This document shows positions 4,785 through 52,374 of a DNA stretch of 64,000 nt, piece after piece. The notes under the pieces are model-generated. The model searched no databases and was not told the DNA's origin. It saw only the letters and a program-made list of their open reading frames with translations. The stretch is from positions 1-64,000 of the IMG/VR virus record IMGVR_UViG_3300034358_000008. One strand, written 5' to 3'. Position 1 is the first letter of the stretch. The number at the start of each line of letters is the position of its first letter. A program made the position numbers and the translations under genes.

Positions 4785-5069
4785 ATGTCGTTCGACAAAG
4801 TAACTCGTCGTGTTAATCGTGTCCAAGCTAATCGCGTAATCCGTAATCAGACTGCTATCTGGTCTTTGTATAACGAACAACGTTGGTTGGAATCACAGAA
4901 GCCTCGTAGCTTCAGCAAAGGTAAGGCTATGAACTGTAGCTGCCGTATTTGCCGTGGTTGGGACAAAGATGGACGGCGCCACCGTTACAATTATCAGTTG
5001 GAGAAAGCCGGTATGCACAAATACGATGAGCGTCCTGATATCATCACTCAAGAAGAAGATTGGATCTAA
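4785..5069 (+). CDS. Small basic protein with a CSCRIC motif
   Basis: 94-aa ORF followed by terminator 5072-5093. Confidence 0.7.
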   Translation: MSFDKVTRRVNRVQANRVIRNQTAIWSLYNEQRWLESQKPRSFSKGKAMNCSCRICRGWDKDGRRHRYNYQLEKAGMHKYDERPDIITQEEDWI

Positions 5070-5574: not shown

Positions 5575-6210
5575 ATGACTACCGATACTCCCGTTCAACG
5601 TATCAAGATTGGCCCAAACCAAGTGTTCCGTTTGGTACAGCTGTTGCCTAAAGATCTACAGGCTAAGTTTACCAAAGAAGCGTATACTGATGTAGTGCAT
5701 GACACTGCTGAGTTCGTACCTGAACCTGAACGTAAGTATGACCATCCACTGGGGCTGGAGTGGTTGACCAAACACAAGATTCCTAATACCGTAGAAGAGT
5801 TGGAAGAACAACGTCAATACGTTTTCCAAACCATGGTAAGTGGTTCTGACACCTACAACGTCGGTCAGTTCTTTGTGGTGTTCCCACGTATCGTTTACGC
5901 CAGTAACGATCTGAAGGATAACCTGTTGGTCGTAGAGGTAATGGATGAACTTGAGTTCCCTCCAATGCCTGATATGAAAGTGGCATACACTGACGAAATG
6001 CGTAAAGCTAACTGGCAAGACGAAGCTACTATCGCTCTGCGAGCTGCACTGCAATCGTACGTCGTCCAAGGCAAGATCAAGATTCATGATGCTGGCTTCC
6101 GTATGTACTCGAGTACGGACATGTATCAGTTCCAAGAACGTTACATTGATCCTGAAGCTGAAGTACTGAGTTTCAAGGATGCTGTTCGTCGTCATCGTCA
6201 GAGCAACTAA
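5575..6210 (+). CDS. Hypothetical protein
   Basis: 211-aa ORF, AAGG SD, followed by a hairpin. Confidence 0.75.
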   Translation: MTTDTPVQRIKIGPNQVFRLVQLLPKDLQAKFTKEAYTDVVHDTAEFVPEPERKYDHPLGLEWLTKHKIPNTVEELEEQRQYVFQTMVSGSDTYNVGQFFVVFPRIVYASNDLKDNLLVVEVMDELEFPPMPDMKVAYTDEMRKANWQDEATIALRAALQSYVVQGKIKIHDAGFRMYSSTDMYQFQERYIDPEAEVLSFKDAVRRHRQSN

Positions 6211-31004: not shown

Positions 31005-32309
31005 ATGTCCACGCAAATCGTAACCTGTCCTAACATGACTCTCGTAATCAAGCGACTGACTGATTACACTGTCATGCACCTCTCTGGTCTCTCCAACATC
31101 CCACACCTCTGCGTTAAGGTTCGTCACAACAACGGCTTTGTGTGGTTTGGCATCAACGTAATCGGTGTTACCGACACAAGTGCATGGTCGAAGAAGACAG
31201 AAGAAACTGTCTACAGCCAGTTCATGGAAGCAATGCGACAGATCATCGACATCGTTACTCTGGAATCGGATGTACCATTGTTGATGCGTTCTTTGCAGGA
31301 TATCACTACTGGTCGTAAGCGTCCTGTGATGTTCGGTGGTAACACCAACGAGTTCGTTCAGATCTGTTCCACTAACAATGTGCAGATCGAAGTGTATCGT
31401 CATGAAGTTCGTCACGAGGCCACCACTTACGGTGGCTTCTTCGCTACGGCCCGTGCTGGCGGTAAGACATATCCAGTAATGGTCTACCATCGTGGGATCA
31501 TCCTGTACAACTACATCACTAAAGAAGCAGTTTGCGAAATGCTTCGTAATGAACTGACTGCTTTGTTCCCAGATACCTTTGGGACTGATCTCGTTATCAA
31601 GTTCAGTGATATCGAGTCTGTTCCACGCAACCGTAGCAAACGGAGCTAACCATGAACTCTCAGATCCTTATTGTAGATCTTGTCCGTAACTGGCATACGG
31701 TCGGAAACAACTCAAGGTTCGCTAGTAAGGATCTTGAGCATTTCACGTTGTCTTTGGTAAGTCAACCGGTTGAATACGATGGCACAGAAGACTTCTCTGT
31801 TATCGTGTTGTGGGGTGATGTTGAAACGAAGCCTAAAGCCGAAGGTGAGCGGAATCCAGTTCATGACCTAATCCATGAAGTGGTGAAGAAGTTCGCTATC
31901 GGTGTAGGGTGTCGTACCAGTCAAGTCAATCATGATAACCGGACTACCAAGGTCAAGCTTAAAGCTGAAGAAGCAAAGAACGTTGTTGAATTTGAATGGC
32001 TGGAGATCAACCTTGCAGATCACAAAAGACTCGAGTGAATTAAGTAGGACCAAGAAGTTAGCGCGCCGTTACGCAAACATGTTGGTGATCTGGGTAACGC
32101 TCACGTATATGCTCGTGATCGCGGTCGGCGTACCGATTAGCATTATCCCAGACATAAAGACATTACTCATTGTCCCTCGTGTGGAAGATCACACTTTGTT
32201 GAAATGGTTAATGTCGGCTTACCTTGCGACAGCATTCTGTCTGGAATGGTTCCTGTATGGAGTCATTCAACGTGCTCGTGCGCGGATCAAGTTGTACGAA
32301 GTAGATTAA
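31005..32309 (+). other. Hypothetical CDS (31005-31649, 31652-32038, and a 2-TM protein ending at 32309)
   Basis: Coupled ORFs. Confidence 0.65.
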
Positions 32310-32334
32310 AGGAATACTGTTGTGGTAATAATAT

Positions 32335-32795
32335 AGGAGTGAATGCTCCTCCCGTGATCATCATGCCTTTCATTGGCAACACCCCCTGATCGCGGGCTTC
32401 CTATTCAGAACCATTGCTACGGCAGTGGATCTAAAAGTTTAGGAGTTCTCAAGGGTCATCTCCCTATCCATGGTCCCCGTCGCCTTAGCTACAGGATAGG
32501 GCCTTGATCGAACTCCGCCTAAGCATAGCTGAACTTTCGGTATACGCGAAGCATTTCCCTCTCCGGGTTTTGTCTTGTGAAGAACATAGTGGCCATTAAC
32601 CAGTGGTCGAACCGAAGCATTGTCCCTTGACTGGTTCTCATCCTGACAATGAAGTTATCAACAACATAACACTAACTGGTTAGGTTATTAGAAGATAGCG
32701 ACTGACGATTGCGATACCTCTGAATAAGCTGGGGGTTACGCTGGCCAGCACGCAAGAGTTAGATTACAGCCCAAGCCCCCTGCCATCTGGCGGGG
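32335..32795 (+). ncRNA. Candidate large structured ncRNA (about 460 nt) of unknown family
   Basis: About 510-nt gap with no credible ORF; many helices, a pseudoknot and a terminal terminator (see findings). Confidence 0.7.
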
Positions 32796-32821
32796 GCTTT
32801 ATTTCGTCTTAAGGAGATACT

Positions 32822-38934: not shown

Positions 38935-38960
38935 TGTATTTTCCTCTAAGACGGAATAGA

Positions 38961-39246
38961 ACCCTACCCGAAGGTAGGGTCTAAGGACGAGTTTACTGTT
39001 TCGCTTCAGCCCATGATACCTTGGGGAAGGGTGCTCTAATATCATCGAGTAGATGGACCTAGTGCCTGAGTCGTCAGGTGTTCAGTCTATTCGGGGTACG
39101 GGCCTTCGACTTTCCTGATACTCTCTTATTCCGACTTGTCAGAGAGCGTCACGGGACATTATTTAATCTCAACTACCTACAGTCTGTGGCCCTAGTCTGA
39201 GGGGATTGGGGGCAAGTAGTTGGAAGAGCAGGACTGTTAGTCTTAC
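38961..39246 (-). ncRNA. Candidate structured ncRNA (about 270-285 nt including the terminator)
   Basis: Starts at the ATAGTATGTA motif, has several stems, and ends at a cUUCGg terminator (38961-38980). Confidence 0.65.
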
Positions 39247-39249
39247 ATA

Positions 39250-41160
39250 CTATCGTGACCAGAGTATTTCTTTCCACTCGTCCGGTAGTTTGTTCATCAG
39301 GTCCTCTACAGTTTGACTCTGGATAAACTGTTTCTGGAGTTGATGATACCTCCAACCCTGAACGGTTTCATATCGAATATCATCGGCGTTATTAGAAGCG
39401 ATATAACCCTTGATCACGTGTAAATCATCACGTGTTTCTTTGTCCCATATCGGTACTATAATTACCGTACCCTTGTACTCTTGATAGAAAGCTAGATCTT
39501 TCAGCAAGTAAACTTTCACCTTACAGTCCGTGTGATAATCTACTACCGAATTGTAGTGCTTAATGAGTTCCAATGCCGCGGGGAACAGCATAGCTAATTC
39601 CTTGGACTGCCTTTGTTCAAGTTCCCATTGCATTACAGTTGTAACAGTTTCGTCAGACAACTCAAGTTTGACTGGGTACGATTGACCACATGAGCAATAA
39701 GTGTAAATAAGCTTATTACCTGTTACCCAGATATCGCCCGATTGTTGGGCATGTAACTGGAGACTACCGTCCGCATCTTCAACGAAGTATTCCTTTTCGG
39801 GATTAAATGCAATTACAGGTGACGCTGGATTAGCGTGGATATAACGTGAAAGAATGCTTTGATCTAATACCATGATGTTTGCCTATGTGAAGTTGTCGTA
39901 GTGTGTCTCACCCGACTTCATTAGATTATCAATGTGAGTACTATTTATCCAAAGACCGCTCTAGCAGCCGCTTCGCTTGATTGCAGTTCACCGCAGTAGT
40001 TACTATACCTGCCAGTAGCAGGATCAAAGCGGAGTTGATCTGTTTTCTTAGGACCGATTGTGATTACCAGTTTCTCGCAGGCTTCGCGGAAACTGAGTGC
40101 TGTTTCTCGACCTATTAGACTAGGTGGTTCATGGTTACCATTATCACGCCAACCAACGGACCAGATCTCAAACTCCCGTGGACGAAGGATATGGTCACGG
40201 CACTCTTTAAGGACGGACATGATCTGATCAAAGTCTTCATAGCCTAAAGCTGTAGCATCACGAACAAATGCACGTTGTGAATGGCCATCAGTCACTAGTT
40301 CGTCCAGAGCTTCTGACTTCTCAATCAAGACGCCTTTGTTATAAAGGATAGCGAGGTCGTTCCACTTCATCCATTCACCCTGTGGGTCCTCTGTGAGCTT
40401 CCCAGTGGGTGGTGGAGCATGTCGGTCAACGATGATACCGATTGGTTTAGATGTATAACGTTTAATAAGAGTTAGGGCTGACATTAGTCTACCTGTATGC
40501 TGATGTAGATCTTGGTTGATCCGGCGTAGATGATATCGTCATTGGTGTACTGTCCAGCCGATACTGGTTTAGATCCAATCACTACGTGATAGTTATCATT
40601 CTTGAAGTTCTTTATAAATCGACAAACCTTGTGTCGTATGTATACGCGACATTTAGTCGATAGCCTAGGGAATTCCTTAGCTATGATCCGATCCATTGTA
40701 CGGTGGTAATCTTGCATGGTCACCTCACAACGTGCACCGCTTGGCTAAAATTTCAGGGGTCATCTTTTGAGCTTCATGTTCGCGAGCGGCACGTTCATTG
40801 AATAGTCGACTACGTTCAGCATGTTGGGCTAAACGTTCTTCTCGGGTAGGGGCAATACGTTGAAGGATCTTTTCCAATAGGTTTTCTGAAAGCATGGTAA
40901 CCTCAATGGCACATGTTAGAACCGACTGTATGGCATTCGCACATACAGATCTTTCTTTTGGCTGTACCGACTTCAACATGATGGTAGATAGGGTATCGTT
41001 GTTCCCGACTATAGATCCACTTACCTAGTTCAGAAGTAGTATCTTCTACAGCAACCAACTTAGCGGACTCGCCATAGTTCTGCTGAAGAAATGTTTCCTT
41101 TACCGTACCATCAGTATTGATGTATTTCTGGTAAGTGTTATCACAGCATGGCTGGCACAT
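39250..41160 (-). other. Minus-strand hypothetical CDS (39250-39873, 39945-40484, 40484-40723, 40725-40895, 40903-41160)
   Basis: Coupled ORFs with GAGG SD motifs. Confidence 0.65.
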
Positions 41161-41223
41161 GGATTAATCCTCAATTAGTTAACTATAGGTCTAGACTAGT
41201 GGGTAATCTTTGAGACGGCATAA

Positions 41224-41554
41224 AGCCAGCCCGAAGGCTAGCTCGTACCAATCGACTACTTTTTGTAAGGCGCGGTCTTATTAGCGCTCCCTTGTACATG
41301 AGACCATCATCGCTTCAGTAGATGGAGGGATCTCAAGTAAACAGTTCGGTTGCGCGACGCAACCTATTTCTAACAGCAGCCGGTCCTCCCGGTCATGGGG
41401 TTTGAACCCTTCCGTGTTAGCTGTATTGTACAATGTTCTCTCCGGTGGCTACGGGTCTTTTCCCTCATTCCTGAGGTCTAGGGTCTTCTCACGCTTACGA
41501 GGCGCTGTCACTATCGCAATCCACATGAACATTGTATTCCCGTGCACGGGAATT
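41224..41554 (-). ncRNA. Candidate structured ncRNA (about 310 nt) downstream of tRNA-Trp
   Basis: Several perfect stems, a T-loop-like arm, and a terminator at 41224-41243. Confidence 0.6.
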
Positions 41555-41630
41555 TGGCACGCACCCCAAGAGTCGAACTCGGAACCAACTGCTTTGGAGG
41601 CAGCTGCTCTGCCAGTTGAGCTAGGCACGT
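41555..41630 (-). tRNA. trnW: tRNA-Trp (CCA)
   Basis: 76-nt cloverleaf; anticodon loop CTCCAAA; T-loop TTCGACT; encoded CCA. Confidence 0.93.
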
Positions 41631-41641
41631 ATTAATTCTTT

Positions 41642-41651
41642 TACATACTAT
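41642..41651 (-). promoter_or_regulatory. ATAGTATGTA late-type (TATG) promoter motif
   Basis: Lies 11 nt upstream of tRNA-Trp; same 10-mer at 39244, 42878 and 51187. Confidence 0.65.
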
Positions 41652-41959
41652 TACTTAGCGAGTAAACTTTTCACGTAAGCTTCCCATTCAAACACTGTAA
41701 AGATAGTCCTGAGTAGGTCACACGTTGATACACCATTTACATAGTTGATATGTAAAGTCTTTAACGAGTGAGCTGGTGTGATGTATGTTAAATTGGAATC
41801 GTATATATCATGCTTCACCAACAACCCATTGCATACATTACCTCCTTCGCTACAGAGGTATGTGATATGATGCCGTCTCTCAACGCCGGTCTCTTCGCAA
41901 TCTGCAACTGCATGATTTGATATTGTAATCATGTCTCTTTTACAACATGGACACTTCAT
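41651..41959 (-). CDS. Small Cys-rich putative zinc-binding protein
   Basis: MKCPCCK...C...C....C pattern. Confidence 0.6.
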   Translation of the reverse strand: MKCPCCKRDMITISNHAVADCEETGVERRHHITYLCSEGGNVCNGLLVKHDIYDSNLTYITPAHSLKTLHINYVNGVSTCDLLRTIFTVFEWEAYVKSLLAK

Positions 41960-41971
41960 AGTAGGTAACCT

Positions 41972-42142
41972 TTAGATAGTACATCTGCGGTTAAGCATTT
42001 CTTCCGTAGGACGTTGCTGCTTAGCCATCAGTGACAGTTGACGAGTCATCAATACCGTACGCATACGGGAACGCCTTAGCCGTGTGGCTTCATCAGGACC
42101 CATAGCCAACCTAGCTTTTTCATACAGTGCTTCTACTGACAT
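41972..42142 (-). CDS. 56-aa basic protein, paralog of 40725-40895
   Basis: Same length; shared L.EK, P, RL and T.E.L..RCT motif. Confidence 0.65.
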   Translation of the reverse strand: MSVEALYEKARLAMGPDEATRLRRSRMRTVLMTRQLSLMAKQQRPTEEMLNRRCTI

Positions 42143-42199
42143 TTGAATAACCTTTAGGGAAAGACGGAATAAGAGAACCCCGAAGGGCTCTCTTAGAAT

Positions 42200-42275
42200 T
42201 GGCTCCATGACCTGGACTCGAACCAGGGACCACACCGTTAACAGCGGTGGGCTCTACCAACTGAGCTATCATGGA
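42200..42275 (-). tRNA. trnN: tRNA-Asn (GTT)
   Basis: 76-nt cloverleaf TCCATGA...TCATGGA-G-CCA; anticodon loop CTGTTAA. Confidence 0.95.
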
Positions 42276-42359
42276 ATGTAACTGGGTGATTCTCCTAACG
42301 CCGTAACGTTAAGTTAAGACAGCATTTACTCAGGCGCAGCCGCTGCAAGAATCATGTAA

Positions 42360-42524
42360 CTATGCTTGCTGTTCACGTTTGTCAAGTATGTACTCGGCAT
42401 CGTTCACAGCTTCTTTTAGAACTTGTTTATCTAGCTTCAGATTTTTCCAGCTAAGTCGAGAGCAACACTGACAGTCAGCTGGTCCGAAGTTATCCAATGG
42501 ACGTGGTTTGATTTTTACTTTCAT
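42360..42524 (-). CDS. 54-aa protein with a CxCC motif, inside the tRNA operon
   Basis: GAGGTG SD before MKVKIK. Confidence 0.6.
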   Translation of the reverse strand: MKVKIKPRPLDNFGPADCQCCSRLSWKNLKLDKQVLKEAVNDAEYILDKREQQA

Positions 42525-42717
42525 CAGACACCTCTTTGAATAGGTAGAATGTAATGTCACTTTAACCAGCGTAAGCTAATAGCCCTGTTAGATAGGCGGG
42601 CCGTCCGAATCAAGGGAGTTGAACCCAAGTTCTACATTACATTCATACAACTGGCGACGGGCACTGTTTAGACTCAGTGCACGGTCAAGCACGCTTGGGA
42701 GGCGACCGTCATTAAAA

Positions 42718-42802
42718 TGGTGGAGAGACAAGGATTCGAACCTTGGAAGAATTAACGCCGGATTTACAGTCCGGTCCCTTTGAGCCGCTCGGGAATCTCT
42801 CC
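42718..42802 (-). tRNA. trnY: tRNA-Tyr (GTA)
   Basis: 85-nt class II cloverleaf; anticodon loop CTGTAAA; GGTTCGAATCC; encoded CCA. Confidence 0.95.
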
Positions 42803-42877
42803 AGTAATAAGCGGGCACTTTCGATCACACTTAAGCAACCTAGTTATGCCCTAAATCTGGCGGACTTTGTATAGTCC

Positions 42878-42887
42878 TACATACTAT
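42878..42887 (-). promoter_or_regulatory. ATAGTATGTA late-type promoter motif of the tRNA-Tyr operon
   Basis: Same 10-mer; about 78-nt leader to tRNA-Tyr. Confidence 0.65.
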
Positions 42888-42920
42888 TGCAACAATTGTA
42901 TTCTTTTACAACGACTTACA

Positions 42921-44030
42921 TCACTTGTCCCAAAGATCACCAAGTTTCACTTGACTGGTTCGTTTAGTGGCACCAGTGTAGTAATTGCTACCATAAGGAT
43001 CGGCAGCTACACACGGTACGTAAGGAATACCCTTCTCTTCACAGATACGTTTGTATTCTTCAGTTGAACGGATCGCCGCTTTGAGTAGTTCGCTAGCCTG
43101 TTGTTGATTCCGTCTCCGTACTTCGGGTGACTGGCTATCAATAGCTGCACGAATTTTCTTTAGATCAAATACTGGGATCATGGATTAACCTACGAAGAAG
43201 AGACGGGTGTTGGTACGGCCAAGTTTAGCCATCAAGCGGTAAAGCTTGTTCAGATTGATCTCACCTGAAAGGATATAACGCATTGCTCCGAAGATAACCA
43301 GCTTATTAAAGTTCTGCTGGAAGCCTGGAATCTTGATCAGTTCTTCTGCAAGGAACTTACCTTCAATCATCCATTTAGTTTCAGCCAAGTCGCCCTCAGC
43401 ATAAACTTCATCGGACTCGTATATCGAATCGGTTTGATAGGCATTGATGAAATTCAACACGGCTTTGCCGTTAGTTGGCCAGCGCTTACAAATGCCCTCG
43501 TCGATAACTTCTTTGGTTCGACCAGCCAAGTTCAACAACTGTTCAAACGCTGATTGCTCTTTACCGACAGCGTATTCTTCCGAGTAGCCTGTCGCATCGA
43601 GATAGACTGTGTCACGAAAATGCTTGTAGCACCAACGACGAATCTGTGGGGTGTGTCCACGGGTTAGGTCACCACCAATAAAGGACGCACCGTCTCTGAA
43701 TTGAGTAAAGCCCACTTCGGTCTTATAGGTGCATGAATCCACGATGCGAGCAGAGTCTTCAATGAAATGATCAGCCATTAGTTTAGCGATCGCTTCCGGG
43801 TGAACAAGTCTAGGATCTTCACCTTCGCTGTCTTCATGGTCAGTTTTACAATCGCTATTTGGTTCTGGAACAAAGAAGTGGTACAGTGCGTCAAGAGCGT
43901 GGTAGGTGAATTGACGTTCACGTTTTGAATCCGATGGGGTTTCGAATTCAGCTGCATCCCCTTCAATCAGGTGTCTTGGGCGATAATGTATATTTTGGTC
44001 TTCTGGACCAATCGTTTTCATGTTAGTCAT
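42921..44030 (-). other. Two hypothetical CDS (42921-43181, 43185-44030)
   Basis: 86 and 281 aa; gctatattaac early-like motif upstream at about 44068-44078. Confidence 0.7.
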
Positions 44031-44151
44031 TTTCTGTATCCTATTCCCCGAGGGGATCTGGTATCAGTTAATATAGCGGGATTGCTACGTACGATACTTC
44101 CACCCAGTAGACTTTAACGACATAAAGCCTCCCCGAAGGGAGGCACTATGA

Positions 44152-46392
44152 TTAGGAGTCTTTAACAGACTTCTCGATCAGCTGGAATACAGCCATGATG
44201 TACGGCTGTAGTTGATGAAACTCAACCCCTACACGATGCATGTTGTACACATGTTCCATAGCCTTCTGATACAACTCTGTAAACTTAGGATCTTTAACTT
44301 GATCATACAACTCCCCATAGTTGGACTTACCTACATATTTCCAGTCCATCCAAGCGTGGGTGTTAATGAAGGTAGAGTTCCACCGCTTAACGAAAGTTAG
44401 GTCTGCCCCTAGTACATTGAACAACTCATAGAGCTTCTTAGCTTCCTCCACAATCTGTTCGGGAGTTAGCGTGTTCACTTCACCAGATTCAACTTTAACC
44501 TTAGGTACTTCTACCTTAGGTTCCTTTAACTGACGAGTAGCCTTCATGATCGTGATGGCTTTCTCAACGTTAGCTGAGTTGTCCAACGATTTACGTTGGA
44601 TCATGTTCATGACTGCTTCCATGTTGTTAAACGCTTGTTCTGCAACTTTGTGATGCTCAACCCGATTAGCTTGACAAGCCTTAATAAACTCAGGCACTAC
44701 TTTATCGTACTCTGCGATTAGGTTAGCGCCTTGTATGGATACTTTCTTGACATCAGACTGGCCATGCGTTTTAACCCAGTTGATGTCAGTGTACTTTTTT
44801 ACTTCATGTACCAGGTTGTGTAAGAAACCTTTGCCTACCGTGTCATAGATTTCGGTATCCTTACCTTTCGTAAAAAACTTCTTGATCGCACCCAACAGAT
44901 CTTCAGTGGATGGGACCAGTTCTGATTCTCCGAAGGTTTCAATAGCTACGCTCTCTATTGGAGTAATAGCTTCGAGACCAACGGTCATAAACTGACGAGC
45001 AACTGGATCGAGGCCATCTATGCCAGCCTGCTCAATCTGAGATCTGTACGTGGTAAGGGTTTTATCATTCATATTGGTTCTTCCAGAGAAATAGTTTTCT
45101 TTAGCTATCAGCATATCGCCTTTGATGGATCTATCCATCCAGACAGCCGCAGCTATGATCATGTCAAAGTATTCTTCACGGGCTTTGTTATACTCTGCAT
45201 TATTTAAGAGTATTTTCCATGGGATAACGTTAGACGATTGAAAAAGCTTCATCCATTTTTCGTTATTATGGAACGCACTTGGTACGTTATAACCCTTAAA
45301 AGATTTCCATTTGATGTTAACACCGTCCCTTAGATAAAACTCCTTGAGCACCTTCAATTGGTGAAAGAGTTCTTTCCCACCTGCTTTAACTTCAGCTTCA
45401 CTAAGAGCGTTGATCTCTTTTACCGTACCACCACCGTACTTAGCTGTATTTAGAAATACAGGTTTTGTCAGCTTAGCCAGATTTTCAGAGAAAGTAGCTA
45501 ATGCCTCATCCGTTGGACCAGCTTTGAATACAGTTTGCATTATAGGCGTTACTTCCGCCAGATATGCATCTACTGTGTTAACCCAGTTAGCGAAGTCTTT
45601 AAGATACGCGCCACCTTGCCCCAGCAATCTCAATATGTCCGGGTTACCCGGTGGTAGCATCTCGATAATGTCAGTCCCATTAATAGGGCCTTTGAGATAT
45701 GTCTGCTTGGCCAACCAACTAGGTGATGCAAGGCTATCTCTTACCTGAGCAAACGCGTATGCGTTGTTATTAAGATTACTTTTACGGAACCCGTGGTCGT
45801 TACCTTTGTTGGAGAAACCGAATGCTTTACGCATCGTATCCATTAATGATTCATTACTAATTTGAGCGACCATGGTATTCCGGTATGCCTCTAATAGTTC
45901 AATTCGTTTAACGGCATGGCGAGAGTAATGTTCCATCCCCGGTTTGATAAAGATCTCACCTTTGACATTCCGGCCAGCGTAATTAGTTTTCTGTACGCGC
46001 ATGATGTAAGAGTTCAATCCTTTACCATCATTGGCATAGCGTTTCATTTCATCAAGCTGTTCACGTGTAGTAGACTTGATCGTGTAGAGGTAACGGGAAC
46101 CTGTAGTGAACTTCACTAGAATCCAGTCGTCTCCAAGATCGTAACTATCCACACCTGAGTTACCGCCAGTGTTAGCATAACTGTGGGCCTGTCTGTGGTC
46201 GTCTAAGAGCTGTGTAATAGAAGCCGGGGGAACGCCCGTTTCTTCTACGATCGCTTCGTCAACGTCACCCCAGTAGCCCTTAACTGTATCTACGGCTTCA
46301 TCCCAGTACTGCTTTACTACATCGACTGCATCCTCATTGGAAACAGTCATCCGATCTTTAATACGACGGATTAAAAGGTCTAGAGAGTTCAT
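44152..46392 (-). CDS. phiKZ-type internal head (virion) protein, modular, with a KTSC-like domain
   Basis: Multiple S/A/G-x-E sites (SNE x2, GLE, AIE, STE), each followed by a related domain; NSGVDSYDLG..ILVKF..GSRYLY segment. Confidence 0.65.
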   Translation of the reverse strand: MNSLDLLIRRIKDRMTVSNEDAVDVVKQYWDEAVDTVKGYWGDVDEAIVEETGVPPASITQLLDDHRQAHSYANTGGNSGVDSYDLGDDWILVKFTTGSRYLYTIKSTTREQLDEMKRYANDGKGLNSYIMRVQKTNYAGRNVKGEIFIKPGMEHYSRHAVKRIELLEAYRNTMVAQISNESLMDTMRKAFGFSNKGNDHGFRKSNLNNNAYAFAQVRDSLASPSWLAKQTYLKGPINGTDIIEMLPPGNPDILRLLGQGGAYLKDFANWVNTVDAYLAEVTPIMQTVFKAGPTDEALATFSENLAKLTKPVFLNTAKYGGGTVKEINALSEAEVKAGGKELFHQLKVLKEFYLRDGVNIKWKSFKGYNVPSAFHNNEKWMKLFQSSNVIPWKILLNNAEYNKAREEYFDMIIAAAVWMDRSIKGDMLIAKENYFSGRTNMNDKTLTTYRSQIEQAGIDGLDPVARQFMTVGLEAITPIESVAIETFGESELVPSTEDLLGAIKKFFTKGKDTEIYDTVGKGFLHNLVHEVKKYTDINWVKTHGQSDVKKVSIQGANLIAEYDKVVPEFIKACQANRVEHHKVAEQAFNNMEAVMNMIQRKSLDNSANVEKAITIMKATRQLKEPKVEVPKVKVESGEVNTLTPEQIVEEAKKLYELFNVLGADLTFVKRWNSTFINTHAWMDWKYVGKSNYGELYDQVKDPKFTELYQKAMEHVYNMHRVGVEFHQLQPYIMAVFQLIEKSVKDS

Positions 46393-46477
46393 ACTAACCT
46401 CGAATGATTAATCATAAGATAGTCTTGTAGGTAAAGCACCAATTCTATGACATTGCGTGCTACTATGAGAACAAACT

Positions 46478-47719
46478 ATGATCGAACAATTACTGATTAT
46501 TTCAGGTTTTGAGTCTGATGTCAATGACGACCATGATTTACCCTTCCCGACAGGGACACCTTTTAAAGGGGTAGTGCGAGCTAAAAACTTCATTACAGGT
46601 GATGCACTAGCTGATGAAATAGGATTGGTTCAAGGCATCTCTATTAACAGCAACGCGGGGTGGTTACACTTCGTGGAAGAAAATGGTTACAACATCTACC
46701 TGGCTAAGAAACCACTACGTTTTAATCTAGGTTGGCCGAGTATAAATAACGCCCAGTTAGATAAAGAAATCGTTTTGGATGGTAAGACATTCAACGTTGA
46801 ATTTATAACGGGTATGAGACGAGACGGTCTACCAGCTTTGAAGGGTAACGCTGGCGGCGCTTGGAACAGATACATCTATAACGTGTATGGTGGTGAGCGT
46901 GCAGATGAGCTACCTAATACCCGATTGAACTGGGGCTCGTACACTGAGGCTATGTTGGGTATTCCTCTTGACTCAGCTGGTGCTACACCGTTAGCCTCAT
47001 TCTGTTGGGTTAAGGAACTTGATAGTACTGGTGGTCATGCGACACGCGGTGTAAGTTATAGTGACGCTAATGTTCCTAACGTAATGGGTGTATGGTACGG
47101 TGGGCAAGATGATATAGCCATCCACTATGCGTGGAGACCCATGCTTGTAGAGAAAGGTACATTCCCTCCTGTTCCAGTAACCCCATTTAAGGGCGAAGTT
47201 GCACAAGCTGATTTCATTACTTTTAGTGATCTGGCTACAGCGGTTGGTGTTACCGAGGGTACACCACTCAACACTGACGCCCCATGGCTGAAGATTGAAC
47301 TGGGTGAGACTACCTATTACTGGCCTAAGGCCTCTATCCGGGGTAGCGTTCTACGTGAAACACTTAATACCCTGAATCTCGTAACAGGTGACACCACGGT
47401 TATTATTGGTGGACTTACGTATAAAGTACGTTTGATCAAAGGTCGGGATGCAGCACAATCTGACGTCATCGGTGAGGAATGGTTAGAATGGCTAACCCAT
47501 TTAACCAACGGTGATTGGGCGGAATACTCAACCGCACAACTGGTAACTGGTACTGGTGGTACAGGTAATGGTGAGCTAGTGCTGACTCAAGAACTTGCAG
47601 CTAACGGTTTCTGGGCAGCTAACGGTTACCCTACGTTACTGGGTTCTGGCTGGTATCAATCGACTGGCGCAACTCATGATGGCTATGGTTGGAGACCTGT
47701 TCTCGAGCTAGTGCCGTAA
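46478..47719 (+). CDS. Virion structural protein, two-domain paralog 1 of 3
   Basis: PFKGVV..NFITG, GWLHF.E.NG...Y.AKKPLR; both halves end in WRP. Confidence 0.75.
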   Translation: MIEQLLIISGFESDVNDDHDLPFPTGTPFKGVVRAKNFITGDALADEIGLVQGISINSNAGWLHFVEENGYNIYLAKKPLRFNLGWPSINNAQLDKEIVLDGKTFNVEFITGMRRDGLPALKGNAGGAWNRYIYNVYGGERADELPNTRLNWGSYTEAMLGIPLDSAGATPLASFCWVKELDSTGGHATRGVSYSDANVPNVMGVWYGGQDDIAIHYAWRPMLVEKGTFPPVPVTPFKGEVAQADFITFSDLATAVGVTEGTPLNTDAPWLKIELGETTYYWPKASIRGSVLRETLNTLNLVTGDTTVIIGGLTYKVRLIKGRDAAQSDVIGEEWLEWLTHLTNGDWAEYSTAQLVTGTGGTGNGELVLTQELAANGFWAANGYPTLLGSGWYQSTGATHDGYGWRPVLELVP

Positions 47720-47815
47720 CATTATAAAGCCCCTCCCGTTAAAGGAGGGGTCTTATGCCGGTCAAGCATTATCTTAATTGTATGATTACTACTATTACGC
47801 TTGGGGAATCCTATT

Positions 47816-49054
47816 ATGTTTGAACAACTCCTGGTGGCTGCTCCTAAAGCCCCCATAACGGACGACAGCGATTTGCCCTTTCCGGCTGGGACGCCATTTA
47901 AAGGAGTAGTGCACGCTAGTAATTTTATTAACGGCGCTCAGCTGGCTACTCAGATTGGATTGGTGAATGGAGTTCCCATCAATAGCGATGCAGGCTGGTT
48001 GCACTTTATAGAAGACAATGGATACAACGTCTACATCGCTAAGAAACCTTTACGTGCTGGAGTCACTTGGCAACAAATTGACACGGCGCAAACCGGTAAA
48101 GAAATCATCATTGGCGGTAAGACATTCTTGGTTACCTTTATCACCGGGTTGAAAACTGCTGGTATGCCTGCGGTTATCGGAAACTCTGGTGGGCAATGGA
48201 ACCGATATATTTACAACGTTTACGGTGGGGAATTTGCTTCAGCTCTACCAGCGGACCGCTTGAACTGGGGTTCTTATACCGAGAAGATGTTGGGGATACC
48301 ATTGCTCACTGAGGGTATTAGTGTCATGGCTTCTTTTAACTATGTTAAAGAAACTAGTTCTAGTGCTTCAGGGGCGCACATCACCCGTGGTATGACCTAC
48401 CCAACAGCGGCAGGTAAACCAAACGTACTCGGTGTGTGGTACGGTGCTCCAAGTAACGGTGAGATGAACTATGGTTGGCGCCCTCTGCTATATGAGAAAG
48501 GCACTACTCCACCAGTACCAATAACACCGTTTAAAGGTGAAGTTGCGCAAGCTGATTTAATTACGTTGGCTGCACTGAGAACTGCAACTGGTTATGCTGG
48601 TGGTACATCTCTGAATCCGACTGCTCCATGGATGATGATTGTAGAGAATGGTAAAACATTCTATTTCCCTAAAGCACCATTGTTGATGACGATGAGTCGT
48701 GAACAACTTAACGCAGCTGGTCTGGTAGATGGTAGTAAAGTAATTACCATTGCCGGTAAGCAGTATAAAGTTCGTTTGATGACTGGTCGAGATACTGCGG
48801 TGAACAGTACATCAGGTGGCGAATGGTTACGATGGATGACCAATCTGACTGATGGTACATGGGCAACATACCCAACAGCTGATCTTGGTGGACCATACCC
48901 AATGAACGGTGGCATGACACACGTCTGGGATAGACATGGTGATAACAACTGGGCACTAAGTGGTTATCCAGGTTTCCTTGGCGCTTGGTATCAAATCCTA
49001 GGATCAGCAGCCGATCCAGCTTATGGGTGGCGCCCAGTATTAGAATTGATTTAG
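47816..49054 (+). CDS. Virion structural protein, two-domain paralog 2 of 3
   Basis: Same motifs. Confidence 0.75.
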   Translation: MFEQLLVAAPKAPITDDSDLPFPAGTPFKGVVHASNFINGAQLATQIGLVNGVPINSDAGWLHFIEDNGYNVYIAKKPLRAGVTWQQIDTAQTGKEIIIGGKTFLVTFITGLKTAGMPAVIGNSGGQWNRYIYNVYGGEFASALPADRLNWGSYTEKMLGIPLLTEGISVMASFNYVKETSSSASGAHITRGMTYPTAAGKPNVLGVWYGAPSNGEMNYGWRPLLYEKGTTPPVPITPFKGEVAQADLITLAALRTATGYAGGTSLNPTAPWMMIVENGKTFYFPKAPLLMTMSREQLNAAGLVDGSKVITIAGKQYKVRLMTGRDTAVNSTSGGEWLRWMTNLTDGTWATYPTADLGGPYPMNGGMTHVWDRHGDNNWALSGYPGFLGAWYQILGSAADPAYGWRPVLELI

Positions 49055-49063
49055 GGGAATATC

Positions 49064-50275
49064 ATGTTTGAAATGATGCTAACTACGGCATTTAAGCTAG
49101 GGTTACCAGATAACTCAGATTTACCGTTCCCATCGGGTACTCCTTTCCAAGGTGTAGTGAGTGCAAGTAACTTTATTACAGGTACCGCTTTAGCGTCAGC
49201 AATAAGTTTAACCCAAGGTACTGGGATGAATAGCGACGCGGGCTGGTTGCACTTTATAGAAGACAATGGATTAGAACTGTACATTGCGAAGAAACCACTA
49301 CGTTACAATGTCACGTGGGAAGAAATTAACGTTCGTCAGAAAGCCACTGAAGTTACTATCGGTGGTGAGGTTTACGTGGTTAAATTCTTAACCGGTATGA
49401 CTGCTCCTAATCTGATGGCTGCCCCTGCTAACCGGGGTGGCCAATGGAATAGATACATCTATAACGTGTATGGTGGACCATATAAATCGTCACTACCTGC
49501 TGGTACATTGAACTGGGGACCTTATTCCGAAAGTATGCTCGGTATTTACACGGCTGGGCAATCTCAAGAAAATGGTGGGTTATGTCTAATGGCAGAGCCC
49601 GTAACTCAAGGTGGTCATGCGACACGAGGGGTCTCATGGACTGATTCCAGCGATCCTAACATCATGGGGTTATGGTACATCACCCCTAATACCCCACGTA
49701 CGTGGTATGGTTGGCGCCCGGTATTGTTCAAGAAATCGACCTTACCACCAACACCTTATAAAGGTCTGGTAGCTGGTGCTAGTCTGATTACTCCGTCGGC
49801 TTTATCTACCTTGGCGGGTTACACTAGTGGTACGCTTATGGATGATGCTACCCCATGGATGCACTTCATTGAAGACAACGGTAAGGAAGTTTACGTTGCG
49901 CAGAGGTCATTTCGTGATAAGTGTACTAGAGCTAGTTTGAACACTGCCGGGATTGGTAATACGGCTAATGGTAAAACTCTCACGATTGGAGGCAAACAGT
50001 ATAAGTGTCGTTTGTTGACAGAGGCTGAGTGGAACCGTTACATGTACGGTGTGTATGGTGATACGTACACAACGGTAAACACGTTGGAATGGGCATCCTT
50101 TAATGATGCTCAGTTGGGTGTTTGTGCAGGCGGTGTAATCGCTGGTGGTCTTAGTCATACCTTCGATGGTACTACCCGTGGATTCACATCCATTGCTGGG
50201 GCTTGGCAAACCAACGACGGTTCACCCGGTACGTCAGGTTATGCATGGCGTCCAATTCTGGAACTCATTCCGTAA
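49064..50275 (+). CDS. Virion structural protein, two-domain paralog 3 of 3
   Basis: Same motifs. Confidence 0.75.
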   Translation: MFEMMLTTAFKLGLPDNSDLPFPSGTPFQGVVSASNFITGTALASAISLTQGTGMNSDAGWLHFIEDNGLELYIAKKPLRYNVTWEEINVRQKATEVTIGGEVYVVKFLTGMTAPNLMAAPANRGGQWNRYIYNVYGGPYKSSLPAGTLNWGPYSESMLGIYTAGQSQENGGLCLMAEPVTQGGHATRGVSWTDSSDPNIMGLWYITPNTPRTWYGWRPVLFKKSTLPPTPYKGLVAGASLITPSALSTLAGYTSGTLMDDATPWMHFIEDNGKEVYVAQRSFRDKCTRASLNTAGIGNTANGKTLTIGGKQYKCRLLTEAEWNRYMYGVYGDTYTTVNTLEWASFNDAQLGVCAGGVIAGGLSHTFDGTTRGFTSIAGAWQTNDGSPGTSGYAWRPILELIP

Positions 50276-50316
50276 CGTCATAAAGCCCCTCCTTTACGGA
50301 GGGGTCTTATTTCGTC

Positions 50317-51058
50317 TTACATCGAGATAGGGATAGACCAGCTCGATGGAGGTTCAATCGTTTCACGGGTGAAGTTACATGTAATCAGAGTACGGTCGTT
50401 ACACTTGACTGAGATTGACGTGATACCCATACCTTGGTCTTTGATACCGTACACATGCTTAACGTCTGGGTGGCTGTTGTGGAGGTTTACCAGTAGTTGT
50501 TGCCATGTAATACCAGCGTCACCCAATAACAAACGGATGCTATCTACGATCTTTTCATTGCGAGTCATTTTTGTAATCCTTCTATTGTAAATGTGTGACG
50601 TACTTGAATTTCATTGTTAGTACCTTTGAATATCCATGTAAACTCAGTCTCACTCGGTGTAAGCTTTCGCTTAACCACTATGATCCGAGCAACACCGGTG
50701 CACTTAGCTTTCACTACCGGTAAGATATCTGCCAAGCAGTCGTCGTAGATGCCTTGTTGTAAGGCTAATCGATCTTCTTCTATAACTAGCATACGGTACG
50801 GTCCGAATGCCACTGACAGTATGCTTGCAGTACCGCGCGTTCACCGTTATGTCCTTTGAACAACCATGTGAGTAGTTCACCAAACTGCGGTAGTCCAGCT
50901 GCGTCTTCACCGATAAAGGTTTTATTACGATGTACCATGGTCAAGGTCTTAACACCTGAACATTCTTGTAGGATGTCCCGATTAACATCTGGATATGAAT
51001 TTGTTGCATGTTCGTATCCCCAGATTTGTAGCAGTCTGTCTTCTGTTATGATTTTCAT
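50317..51058 (-). other. Three small hypothetical CDS (50317-50568, 50565-50813, 50786-51058)
   Basis: Overlapping minus-strand ORFs. Confidence 0.6.
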
Positions 51059-51085
51059 TTTGTACGCCTTTTTAGTTAAAAGCAA

Positions 51086-51189
51086 AATAAAGTCCTCCCC
51101 GAAGGGAGGAGCTTTACCAACCCACAAACCAACACTAAAGGAGAACCATCATGCAATCCACAATGGAGTAACGTTATCGCTTCCGTTAC
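51086..51189 (-). ncRNA. Candidate ~105-nt sRNA with an anti-SD segment
   Basis: ATAGTATGTA motif at 51187-51196, 5' hairpin, UUCUCCUUUA, and a cUUCGg terminator with U-tract. Confidence 0.6.
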
Positions 51190-51210
51190 ATACTATTACA
51201 ACAAAGTATG

Positions 51211-52374
51211 TTAATCTAGGAAGTCGACTTCGAATTCTGCTTGTTCATTGGAGGTGTCCAAAGCGTTAACCATGTACTGGTTGTTATCCACTTCTTGAGG
51301 ACTGGTTTGGTTTGCAGCAAGATCGAGATATTCGGTCATGTAAGGGAGTGGGTTCTTCTCAGGCCATTCCAGTTCAAAACCAGTAACTTCCAAGAACTCA
51401 GCGTAGTGAGCTTCAGTCAGTTGACCTTTATGGCCAGTGAAGATACCAGCAGCATTACCATTGAACAGGACCCATTGGATCATCTTCTTCAGTGTCACAC
51501 CCGGCAGTTCACGACCTTCAGAGAACAGGTACATCAACCAACGAACTTCCGACATCAGAACTTCCCAATACAACTTGGTGCATTCTTCTTTGGTTTGTTC
51601 GTATGCAAGACGTCCACGTTCCGTTTTAAGCAGGGCTTTGATTACTTCCTGACCGAACTGTGCATGGATCTCGAACTCGTCGATAGCGATCTTCTGGACA
51701 CCCATAACGATAGGTTGGAAGCGACCCATCTTACCGAAGGCGAAGGTCACAGCAAACGAAGCCATGAACTGAACACGTTCTAGGTAGTACAGAGCCATGA
51801 AGAACTTGAAGATCTTGTTGTACAAGTCTTGATCGTTCGGGATAGTACCACAAGCGTAAGCATGGGAAGCATCATGTGCCTCACCCATTACTTTAGCTAC
51901 TGTCACCAGACGCTCTTGGGCTTCTTGTACTTTCAGAATCTCATCCAGAATAACCTGTGGATTCTTAAACGAGTTACGCACGATCTCTGAGTAGGTCAGA
52001 GCGTGCAGGTTCTCGTTGGAGTTGATCAGTACGTAGCCTGCCCACACACGGGAGTCAGTCATTACTGGACCAAGGATGTTTACGATAGCACGGGATGCAG
52101 TAGCGTCAGCTTCCCATTGCCATGCCAGAGTCTTGATCATCATCTCGTAAGAAGTACGGTCACACGTTTCAAACTCGTGGAGACAGTCAGCATACGGGAA
52201 TTCATTCTCATCCCAATCCATCATCTTCAAACGTTTGTACAGGTTGAAGAGGATCGGGTGATGGTTGTTGATAGAATCGAACAGGCCCGGCTCCTGACCC
52301 AGAATGATCTCGTTGGAATCGTAGTCGGACTTGTTAGCGTTAAAGATTTTAATCGGGAGATCTACGTTGGACAT
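51211..52374 (-). CDS. nrdB: Ribonucleotide reductase class Ia beta subunit
   Basis: Diiron and radical residues: EAD, ENLHALTY, LERVQF and DEFEIH. Confidence 0.93.
   Translation of the reverse strand: MSNVDLPIKIFNANKSDYDSNEIILGQEPGLFDSINNHHPILFNLYKRLKMMDWDENEFPYADCLHEFETCDRTSYEMMIKTLAWQWEADATASRAIVNILGPVMTDSRVWAGYVLINSNENLHALTYSEIVRNSFKNPQVILDEILKVQEAQERLVTVAKVMGEAHDASHAYACGTIPNDQDLYNKIFKFFMALYYLERVQFMASFAVTFAFGKMGRFQPIVMGVQKIAIDEFEIHAQFGQEVIKALLKTERGRLAYEQTKEECTKLYWEVLMSEVRWLMYLFSEGRELPGVTLKKMIQWVLFNGNAAGIFTGHKGQLTEAHYAEFLEVTGFELEWPEKNPLPYMTEYLDLAANQTSPQEVDNNQYMVNALDTSNEQAEFEVDFLD

What the first reader, a model, noticed from the sequence alone, without database searches (positions are those of the whole stretch)
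39244..51196. One 10-mer, ATAGTATGTA, heads four minus-strand RNA units
Exact copies (TACATACTAT on +) are at 39244, 41642, 42878 and 51187. Two precede tRNA units and two precede ORF-less structured segments, which supports the latter being real RNA genes. It contains the phiKZ late TATG core, but the extended identity suggests a dedicated stable-RNA promoter class. The 39246 and 42880 transcripts also begin with a shared hairpin, GTA(A/G)GACT-loop-AGTCC.
Basis: partly seen in the sequence, partly recalled or inferred. Interest (0 to 1): 0.78.

Follow-up and report, generated by a model that had tools for sequence, protein, structure and literature searches.

The report
Jumbo-phage middle promoter heading RNA genes
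The repeated 10-mer is the start-site half of the already known phiKZ-type "middle" promoter of a giant Pseudomonas-type phage, and in this phage it sits mainly in front of tRNA genes and several conserved, structured, previously unnamed non-coding RNAs.

Summary
ATAGTATGTA occurs four times in the window, all on the minus strand (0.14 expected), and five times in the 325-kb genome.

It is not a stand-alone motif. It covers positions -7 to +3 of a two-part promoter: A-rich box ending in TAC (-27 to -18), N10, ATAnTAT, then G or A at +1. The same architecture sits at orthologous sites in 201phi2-1, Viktualia and three uncultured relatives. In phiKZ it precedes the tRNA genes, and one copy coincides with the published 5' end of an ncRNA (270595).

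This matches the published phiKZ/201phi2-1 middle promoter (TACT about -22, A-rich upstream). That class also drives protein genes, here chimallin and others. So "dedicated stable-RNA promoter class" is only partly right. The best-matching copies, however, are strongly biased to non-coding units.

The ORF-less segments are real structured RNAs:
- A, about 300 nt.
- B core, 126 nt, directly after tRNA-Trp, with 19 compensatory pairs and an invariant centre.
- D, about 105 nt.
- E (window 32335-32810), F and G, found with the motif.

None matches Rfam. The promoter is a new member of a known kind. The RNA families look new, and their functions are unknown.

The parts
42878..42907 (-). Promoter of the tRNA-Tyr unit. 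Box AAAAGAATAC at 42907-42898, N10, 10-mer at 42887-42878, predicted start G at 42880.
   Evidence: Scores 36.3 with a weight matrix trained only on relatives' promoters. Orthologous promoters are in G003/L007, Viktualia and L008.
42161..42880 (-). tRNA-Tyr transcription unit. It holds a 5' hairpin (42880-42862), tRNA-Tyr (42802-42718), module C with a T-arm-like hairpin (about 42650-42545), a 54-aa ORF (42524-42360), tRNA-Asn (42275-42200), and a terminator hairpin plus TATTCCGTCTT tail (42193-42161).
   Evidence: ARAGORN and Rfam and the sequence itself. A module C homologue lies between tRNA-Trp and the B core in L007.
41642..41671 (-). Promoter of the tRNA-Trp + B unit. Box AAAAGTTTAC at 41671-41662, 10-mer at 41651-41642, start G at 41644. 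It overlaps the TAA stop of the upstream ORF.
   Evidence: Weight-matrix score 26.5.
41555..41630 (-). tRNA-Trp (CCA), 14 nt downstream of the predicted start.
41429..41554 (-). B core: a 126-nt structured RNA directly after tRNA-Trp. It has a P0 hairpin and nested helices P1 and P2 around a sequence-invariant centre of about 60 nt.
   Evidence: Nine homologues, all in jumbo-phage tRNA clusters. 19 of 39 pairs show compensatory changes, 0 of 500 shuffles reach that, and slid controls give 1-4. No Rfam match.
41212..41428 (-). 3' part of the B unit. It has a lineage-specific insert with a T-arm-like hairpin, a conserved single-stranded CU-rich stretch (ACUUGAGAUCCCUCCAUC..CUGAAGC), and a terminator (41243-41212).
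   Evidence: A 51-nt piece matches an inter-tRNA spacer of phage D6.
39244..39273 (-). Promoter of RNA A. Box AAAGAAATAC at 39273-39264, 10-mer at 39253-39244, start G at 39246. Its TAG is the stop codon of the upstream ORF.
   Evidence: Weight-matrix score 24.4. Orthologues are at L007 3262 and Viktualia L001 8219.
38948..39246 (-). RNA A: about 300 nt without an ORF, a 5' hairpin and a terminator (38982-38948). In Viktualia the homologue runs straight into tRNA-Leu.
   Evidence: 15 compensatory pairs against 0-3 in slid controls. No Rfam match.
51187..51216 (-). Promoter of RNA D. 10-mer at 51196-51187, start G at 51189. The upstream half is degenerate (ATTAACATAC, with TAC at the correct spacing).
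   Evidence: The initiator AT(A/G)nTATGTA is conserved before D in G003, Viktualia and 201phi2-1. Weight-matrix score below 6.
51083..51189 (-). RNA D: about 105 nt. Two 5' hairpins, a conserved single-stranded UUCUCCUUUAGUGUUGGUU, and an intrinsic terminator (51110-51093 plus a T tract). It lies downstream of the nrdB-like gene, as in the relatives.
32308..32810 (+). Promoter (AAAGGAATAC, N10, ATAATAT, start A at 32335) plus RNA E, about 475 nt without an ORF, ending in a terminator (32775-32810).
   Evidence: Weight-matrix score 24.5. Sequence and ORF list. Homologues in 201phi2-1, Viktualia and G003. 27-28 compensatory pairs against 2-6 in slid controls. No Rfam match.

Best explanation
What it is. 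ATAGTATGTA is the initiator (positions -7 to +3) of the two-part middle-class promoter of a phiKZ-like (Serwervirus-like, nucleus-forming) jumbo phage. The full promoter is an A-rich stretch ending in (A/T)TAC at -27 to -18, ten variable bases, ATA-N-TAT, then the start nucleotide (G here, A in some relatives), then TA.

Inferred mechanism. The phage's own multisubunit RNA polymerase starts at the G of TATG. In phiKZ the beta-like subunit binds TATG on the non-template strand. The -22 box is read by an unknown determinant specific to middle promoters.

What it drives here. In this phage the copies with the best consensus drive stable-RNA units on the minus strand:
- tRNA-Tyr, module C, a small ORF and tRNA-Asn.
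- tRNA-Trp and RNA B.
- RNA A.
- RNA D.
- On the plus strand, RNA E.

Most transcripts open with a 5'-terminal hairpin. I infer that this protects them from decay that starts at the 5' end. They end at the phage-type terminator (hairpin plus TTAT(G/T)CCGTCT).

Inferred fate of the RNAs. Host RNase P and the 3' tRNA-processing enzymes release the tRNAs, and so also release the adjoining structured RNAs as separate stable molecules. This would resemble T4 species 1 and 2 RNAs. B, with its invariant internal loops, most likely binds a protein. D and the B tail have the build of base-pairing sRNAs: hairpins, a single-stranded CU-rich stretch, then a terminator.

Shown versus inferred. Shown: motif statistics, conservation at orthologous sites, covariation, tRNA identity. 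Inferred: the start site, the timing, the polymerase, the processing and the RNA functions.
For: Motif excess:
- The 10-mer occurs 4 times against 0.14 expected.
- The strict two-part pattern WWTAC-N10-ATRNTATR gives 9 hits in this genome. The reversed control gives 0 and shuffles about 1.
- The same pattern gives 26 hits against 1 control hit across five relatives' genomes.

Independent scan. A weight matrix trained only on 12 relatives' promoters ranks 42880, 41644, 32335 and 39246 as the four best sites in 650 kb. Their scores are 24-36. The best score in each of five shuffled genomes was 8.6-13.2.

Orthologous promoters. They occur before the same RNA units in Viktualia, 201phi2-1, G001, G003 and L008. 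The box and the initiator are kept even where they overlap diverged coding sequence.

phiKZ. The strict pattern precedes tRNA-Leu, tRNA-Asp/Asn and tRNA-Asn. At 270596 it precedes the ncRNA whose mapped 5' end is 270595 (PMC10914365).

Published descriptions:
- Middle motif: TACT at -22 with an A-rich stretch upstream, a secondary TSS at PHIKZ054 and TSSs at tRNAs (PMC8244752).
- AAanTTACc at -24, some with TATG at the start (PMC4666361).
- The 201phi2-1 tRNA-Leu is transcribed from a middle promoter (PMC11512511). Its site at 300440-300462 matches the pattern.

Other support:
- The chimallin gene carries the same promoter here.
- Covariation supports RNAs A, B, E, F and G.
- The 5' ends are unusually structured.
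Against: - No transcript data exist for this phage. It comes from a peat metagenome, and no RNA run holds it.
- The supplementary TSS tables of the two cappable-seq papers could not be read. Of the start sites predicted at the motif copies, only one, in phiKZ, could be set against a published coordinate.
- Purified phiKZ nvRNAP does not transcribe middle promoters efficiently in vitro. The enzyme or factor that reads the -22 box is unknown.
- The D promoter and the fifth copy at 190436 lack a good upstream box.
- The covariation structures were derived from the same small alignments (3-9 sequences) on which they were counted.
Confidence: 0.8

Rival explanations
1. The extended 10-mer defines a separate promoter class reserved for stable RNAs, distinct from the promoters of protein genes. 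It might, for example, be read by a dedicated factor.
For: - In this genome 4 of 5 exact 10-mers head non-coding units. So do 6 of the 8 credible strict two-part matches.
- Counting ATA(G/C)TATGTA in the relatives: G003 has 3 of 3 before RNA units, Viktualia 3 of 3, and G001 1 of 1 before a mini hairpin RNA.
- Most two-part sites in the relatives are followed by 200-580 nt without an ORF.
- Protein-operon promoters with the same box have weaker initiators.
Against: - The same architecture heads chimallin (168-nt leader) and a 647-aa protein gene.
- The only exact 10-mer in 201phi2-1 and the fifth copy here precede protein genes.
- Published middle promoters of phiKZ and 201phi2-1 drive many protein genes.
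- The match quality runs in a continuum, not in two separate motifs.
Confidence: 0.12
2. The 10-mer marks an RNA processing site, or is a leftover of duplicated tRNA cassettes. It is not a site of transcription initiation. The RNA units would then be made by read-through from upstream genes.
For: - Three of the four copies abut or overlap the stop codon of an upstream ORF on the same strand, with no terminator in between.
- The modules (tRNAs, RNAs, small ORFs) are shuffled between phages. That fits cassette duplication.
Against: - The conserved part extends 27 nt upstream, into diverged coding sequence, at a fixed spacing. That fits a DNA signal.
- Outside the box and the initiator, the flanks of the copies share no similarity.
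- In phiKZ the equivalent site is a cap-enriched (primary) 5' end (PMC10914365).
- Unit F is antisense to its neighbours, so it cannot be made by read-through.
Confidence: 0.05
3. The ORF-less segments are only long 5' leaders or attenuators of the downstream protein genes, not free-standing RNA genes.
For: - A, D, E and G each end in a terminator just before a same-strand ORF.
- The phiKZ and 201phi2-1 papers describe many '5'UTR-derived sRNAs' made by premature termination with partial read-through.
Against: - B lies between tRNAs (L048) or directly after one.
- In Viktualia A is followed by tRNA-Leu, not by a protein gene.
- F is antisense to its neighbours.
- The structured cores are better conserved than the adjoining genes.
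Confidence: 0.2

Closest known systems
phiKZ / 201phi2-1 middle promoters (Ceyssens 2014, cited through Yakunina 2015, PMC4666361; Wicke 2021, PMC8244752; Putzeys 2024, PMC10914365; the 201phi2-1 ONT-cappable-seq study, PMC11512511)
   Same: An A-rich stretch plus a TAC(T/C) box about 20-24 nt upstream of the start. TATG or TATA at the start. Used for the tRNAs, for the chimallin secondary TSS and for the nrd genes. Found on the lagging-strand tRNA island next to nrdA/nrdB.
   Different: Here the initiator is extended and nearly invariant (ATAGTATGTA), and the best copies are concentrated on non-coding units. I could not see the published logos, so I cannot say whether the ATA at -7 to -5 and the TA at +2/+3 are already part of them.
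phiKZ late promoter (TATG, with G as +1; read by the nvRNAP beta-like subunit gp123; PMC4666361, PMC12809450)
   Same: TATG with the start at G. AT-rich surroundings. No -10/-35 elements.
   Different: Late promoters have no -22 box. In vitro, adding the box to a late promoter lowers transcription by nvRNAP alone.
Phage T4 species 1 and 2 RNAs (rnaC, rnaD)
   Same: Structured stable RNAs of 119-139 nt lying directly after a tRNA inside the phage tRNA cluster. Their function is still unknown. B core is 126 nt and starts right after tRNA-Trp or tRNA-Cys.
   Different: The B covariance model finds no sequence or structure similarity to them. The phage families and the polymerases are different.
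phiKZ and 201phi2-1 '5'UTR-derived' and intergenic sRNAs (phiKZ 270595-270485 and the 141-nt RNA upstream of PHIKZ302; the 201phi2-1 sRNA upstream of tRNA-Leu)
   Same: The same genomic island and the same promoter type. Each starts with a 5' hairpin and ends at a phage terminator. The 201phi2-1 tRNA-Leu leader aligns with the 3' part of RNA A.
   Different: The B core model does not match phiKZ. A, B, E, F and G are longer than 250 nt, or lie outside a 5'UTR, or both. The <250-nt filter used for 201phi2-1 would therefore miss them.

Membership tests
phiKZ-type middle promoter | A-rich stretch followed by a TAC(T/C) box centred about 22-24 nt upstream of the start | tested here: met
   Met at 42880, 41644, 39246 and 32335, where the box lies at -27 to -18. 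Degenerate at 51189. Absent at 190436.
phiKZ-type middle promoter | A primary (5'-triphosphate) transcript end at the predicted +1 | not testable with these tools
   No RNA data exist for this phage. There is only indirect support: the phiKZ motif copy has its G at 270596, and the published ncRNA 5' end is at 270595 (PMC10914365).
phiKZ-type middle promoter | Middle timing of expression and dependence on the phage-encoded RNA polymerase | not testable with these tools
   Inferred from the published classing of the 201phi2-1 tRNA-Leu promoter as middle. Its sequence matches the pattern.
phiKZ late promoter | TATG with G as the start, and no -22 middle box | tested here: not met
   TATG is present, but the middle box is present too at three of the four copies.
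tRNA genes | Cloverleaf scored by ARAGORN and by Rfam RF00005 | tested here: met
   tRNA-Trp, tRNA-Asn and tRNA-Tyr score 53-66 bits against a threshold of 29.
Any Rfam 15 family, for RNAs A, B, C, E, F and G | Covariance-model match at the gathering score, or at least a suggestive E-value | tested here: not met
   The whole window at gathering score gives only the three tRNAs. Permissive E-value scans of 38.8-43 kb and of the E, F, G and H loci give nothing credible. The D region was covered only by the gathering-score scan.
T4 rnaC/rnaD-like stable RNAs | Position directly after a tRNA in the phage tRNA cluster | tested here: met
   B core starts right after tRNA-Trp: 0 nt in this window, 7 nt in L005. 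It starts 3 nt after tRNA-Cys in L048.
T4 rnaC/rnaD-like stable RNAs | Sequence or structure homology | tested here: not met
   Model R1 run with filters off on the T4 tRNA region gives a best E-value of 2.7, not at rnaC or rnaD.
Base-pairing sRNA with an intrinsic terminator (RNA D) | 5' hairpins, a conserved single-stranded seed, a Rho-independent terminator, and an identifiable target | tested here: inconclusive
   The architecture and seed conservation are met. The target search against the phage's translation-initiation regions is no better than with shuffled seeds. The host is unknown.

The most novel reading that the evidence does not exclude
In Serwervirus-like nucleus-forming jumbo phages, the full-consensus form of the middle promoter marks a small regulon. 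That regulon consists almost entirely of non-coding RNAs: the tRNAs plus at least seven conserved structured RNA families (A to G, 105-475 nt) that no database lists. One of them is B, a 126-nt RNA with a roughly 60-nt invariant core, embedded in tRNA clusters and released by tRNA processing. If these RNAs have dedicated roles, they would be a new layer of jumbo-phage biology. Possible roles are decoys against host tRNA-targeting defences, partners of phage proteins, or regulators of translation outside the phage nucleus.
Probability: 0.3. Interest if true: 0.75.

Novelty: new member of a known kind. Interest (0 to 1): 0.5.

Why it matters
The promoter is ordinary for this phage group. Recognising that prevents a false claim of a new promoter class.

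The useful result is practical. The two-part motif is specific enough (about 9 sites per 325 kb, about 1 by chance) to work as a finder of non-coding RNA genes in phiKZ-like phages. Here and in the relatives it located seven structured RNA families supported by covariation. Genome annotations either leave these blank or fill them with short "hypothetical proteins".

These are concrete candidates for the largely unexplored RNA biology of nucleus-forming phages. They also offer a modern parallel to the still unexplained T4 species 1 and 2 RNAs.

Tried and rejected
- K-mer enrichment in intergenic regions. It recovered terminators, ribosome-binding sites and AT-rich motifs, but not the 10-mer, which has too few copies.
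- A plain list of intergenic TATG sites. Too noisy to define a class.
- Sigma-70-type promoters. There is no excess around the units, so host-type promoters are rejected.
- The generic terminator scan. It misses the phage-type terminators because their T tract is interrupted.
- Rfam. Nothing for any ORF-less unit. An RNase P-like reading of short matches in A and E (AGGAAAGUC, GAACnCCGCCUAAGC) was dropped for that reason.
- The B core model against phiKZ, D6 and T4 rnaC/rnaD. No match.
- The B pattern in 185,579 prokaryote genomes. Zero hits. Three of the five metagenome pattern hits were chance matches.
- Target prediction for RNA D. Not better than shuffled seeds.
- Supplementary TSS tables of both cappable-seq papers. 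Not held.
- RNA runs. None for this phage or for 201phi2-1. One plant metatranscriptome gave a single 185-nt contig over a relative's B core. This is only a weak hint of expression.
- An H-family RNA seen in Viktualia and 201phi2-1. Not found in this genome.

Full report
**Source.** The window is the first 64 kb of a 324,912-bp, 46% G+C virus record assembled from a peat metagenome. Its nearest named relatives are Pseudomonas phages Viktualia and 201phi2-1. It encodes a chimallin (PF25677, E = 4e-254), so it is a phiKZ-like, nucleus-forming jumbo phage.

**The observation.**
- TACATACTAT occurs at 39244, 41642, 42878 and 51187. Chance expectation is 0.14, and no shuffle out of 100 reaches four.
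- The genome holds five copies, all on the minus strand.
- Reading the minus strand: the 42887 copy lies 78 nt before tRNA-Tyr and the 41651 copy 14 nt before tRNA-Trp.
- The 39253 copy opens about 300 nt with no credible ORF, closed by a hairpin terminator.
- The 51196 copy opens about 105 nt closed by an intrinsic terminator.
- The fifth copy (190436) follows a terminator and precedes a protein ORF. That locus is not conserved in the closest relative.

**The motif is half of a larger signal.**
- Aligning the copies shows a second conserved block at fixed spacing: AAA(R)nn(A/T)TAC at -27 to -18, ten variable bases, ATAGTAT, then G(+1)TA.
- The 51189 copy has only TAC at the right place. The 190436 copy has no box.
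- The same two-part element with slightly different initiators heads five further units:
  - The chimallin gene, after a 168-nt leader (113611).
  - A 647-aa protein gene, after a 91-nt leader (90304).
  - An ORF-less unit of about 475 nt in the window (E, 32335-32810, plus strand).
  - An ORF-less unit of about 175 nt that is antisense to its neighbours (F, 187623).
  - An ORF-less unit of about 190 nt (G, 293732).
- The strict pattern WWTAC-N10-ATRNTATR has 9 matches in the genome. The reversed pattern has 0 and shuffles give about 1.
- To avoid circularity I trained a weight matrix only on 12 promoters from the relatives. Its four best sites in 650 kb are 42880, 41644, 32335 and 39246, scoring 24-36. 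The best score in each of five shuffled genomes was 8.6-13.2.

**Conservation.**
- Orthologous promoters precede the same RNA units in Viktualia (before tRNA-Tyr, before tRNA-Ser + B, before A + tRNA-Leu, before D), in 201phi2-1 (B, E, tRNA-Leu, D), and in the uncultured relatives G001, G003 and L008.
- The box and the initiator are kept even where they overlap the diverged 3' ends of upstream ORFs.
- Across the five relatives' whole genomes the pattern gives 26 hits against 1 for the control. Most hits are followed by 200-580 nt without an ORF.
- ATA(G/C)TATGTA occurs 3 times in G003 and 3 times in Viktualia, always at RNA units.

**Link to experiment.**
- In the phiKZ tRNA island the strict pattern precedes tRNA-Leu, tRNA-Asp/Asn and tRNA-Asn.
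- It also sits with its G at 270596, at the head of the ncRNA re-annotated as 270595-270485 from cappable-seq and northern data (PMC10914365).
- Wicke et al. describe the phiKZ middle motif as TACT centred 22 nt upstream of the TSS, preceded by an A-rich repeat. They found it at 28 TSSs, including PHIKZ301, 305 and 306 and a secondary TSS of PHIKZ054. They also report TSSs at tRNAs.
- Yakunina et al. give AAanTTACc at about -24, with TATG at the start of some middle promoters. They show that nvRNAP alone transcribes such promoters poorly.
- The 201phi2-1 study classes the tRNA-Leu promoter as middle. Its site matches my pattern.
- Conclusion: the 10-mer is the initiator of the known middle class. 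It is not a late promoter and it is not a new class.

**Is it specific to stable RNA?** Not as a class.
- Chimallin and another protein gene carry it.
- Protein operons directly after terminators, and nrdB, carry the same box with weaker initiators.
- As a matter of degree the bias is striking. Six of the eight credible strict matches here, and nearly all exact 10-mers in the relatives, head non-coding units. The genome has roughly 480 protein genes.
- The simplest reading is that stable-RNA units use the consensus, presumably strongest, version of the promoter.

**The RNAs are real.**
- B core (41554-41429) has nine homologues, all in jumbo-phage tRNA clusters. In L048 it lies between tRNA-Cys and tRNA-Trp.
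- Nineteen of its 39 predicted pairs show compensatory changes, 97% of cells are paired, 0 of 500 shuffles reach that, and slid controls give 1-4.
- Its central 60 nt or so are identical in all but one of the nine sequences. That points to a constraint beyond pairing. The inner fold is therefore unverified.
- Compensatory pairs for the other families, against slid controls: A 15 against 0-3, E 28 against 2-6, F 11 against 0-4, G 16 against 3-4. These structures were predicted on the same small alignments.
- D is conserved in four phages: two 5' hairpins, a single-stranded CU-rich stretch and a terminator. The 3' tail of the B unit has a similar layout.
- None matches Rfam.
- B is absent from phiKZ, D6, T4 rnaC/rnaD and, by pattern, from 185,579 prokaryote genomes.
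- A plant metatranscriptome holds one 185-nt contig over a relative's B core. This is weak support only.

**5' hairpin.** The first 36 nt of the nine transcripts are more structured than random 36-mers (-8.5 against -4.7 kcal/mol, p = 0.0012). In most of them the helix starts within four bases of +1.

**Mechanism, with status.**
- Shown: the motif excess, its two-part form, its conservation at orthologous sites, tRNA identity, RNA covariation, and terminators at the unit ends.
- Inferred: initiation at the G of TATG by the phage RNA polymerase. This rests on homology with phiKZ, where the beta-like subunit binds TATG (PMC12809450).
- Inferred: middle timing, a factor that reads the box, and stabilisation by the 5' hairpin.
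- Inferred: release of B and the other modules by tRNA processing, as for T4 species 1 and 2 RNAs.
- Functions of A to G are unknown. My best guesses are protein binding for B and base-pairing regulation for D and the B tail. A target search for D was negative.

**Verdict.**
- The promoter is a new member of a known kind.
- The RNA families it points to appear undescribed and are the part worth following up.

Noticed in passing
window 32308-32810 (+): A fifth unit in the window with the same promoter type: RNA E, about 475 nt, no ORF and no Rfam match. It is conserved and covarying in 201phi2-1 (between gp424 and gp425), Viktualia and G003. In Viktualia the homologous stretch is annotated as three short hypothetical proteins; in 201phi2-1 it overlaps the start of gp425.
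   Followed up: yes
G000 187623-187450 (-), G000 293732-293925 (+); loci L058, L059: Two more ORF-less units outside the window, F (about 175 nt) and G (about 190 nt). Each has the two-part promoter, a terminator, homologues in the relatives and covariation. A further family, H (Viktualia 85717, 201phi2-1 310902), has no counterpart in this genome.
   Followed up: partly
genome-wide, e.g. window 38960-38948, 41223-41212, 42171-42161, 32798-32810: Terminator hairpins, often with a CTTCGG loop, are followed by a conserved tail TTAT(G/T)CCGTCT(T/C) instead of a plain T tract. It contains a TATG that is not a promoter, and generic terminator scans miss it. It is probably the published 201phi2-1 terminator 'motif A'.
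   Followed up: partly
window 41185-41160 (-); L007 about 1050-1100; L008 about 3530-3480: Directly after the B terminator lies AAAGATTAC-N14-TATA|G, then the leader TTAACTAA, then a ribosome-binding site and ATG. This is a protein-operon promoter with the same box but a weaker initiator. It accounts for the intergenic enrichment of TTAACTAA.
   Followed up: partly
window 42545-42650 (-): Module C is an element of about 105 nt closed by an 11-bp stem (GAATGTAATGT/ACATTACATTC), with a T-arm-like hairpin (GGGTTCAACTCCC). It follows tRNA-Tyr here but lies between tRNA-Trp and the B core in G003. The RNA modules are shuffled between phages.
   Followed up: partly
window 41330-41428 (-); L003 5001-5051: Between B core and the B tail there is a lineage-specific insert with another T-arm-like hairpin. 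A 51-nt piece is 86% identical to a spacer between tRNA-Tyr and tRNA-Pro in Pseudomonas phage D6.
   Followed up: no
L001 about 4822-4910; L002 about 5775-5865: Viktualia and 201phi2-1 carry an unannotated tRNA-like gene right after the promoter. It has acceptor, D and T arms and an encoded CCA, but a 9-bp anticodon-like stem with loop UGAAAGA. This window has no counterpart.
   Followed up: no
window 41429-41520, run X5: A plant metatranscriptome holds a 185-nt contig about 89% identical to the B core, with 201phi2-1-like flanks. No neighbouring protein-coding sequence was laid at 80% likeness or more; the only other contigs fell on tRNA-Asn.
   Followed up: partly
G000 190436-190400 (-); 201phi2-1 4200-4150 (-), locus L051: The fifth 10-mer here and the only one in 201phi2-1 both precede protein genes. 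They share GATAGTATGTA..ACCTTTT, which suggests a related short-leader promoter of another kind.
   Followed up: no
window 51211-52374 (-) and 52406: By position this gene corresponds to nrdB of phiKZ (gp305) and 201phi2-1 (gp457); I did not run a family search on it. Its upstream region has the box AAAGATTAC with a degenerate initiator (TATTTAT|TGT). This fits the published middle TSS of PHIKZ305.
   Followed up: partly
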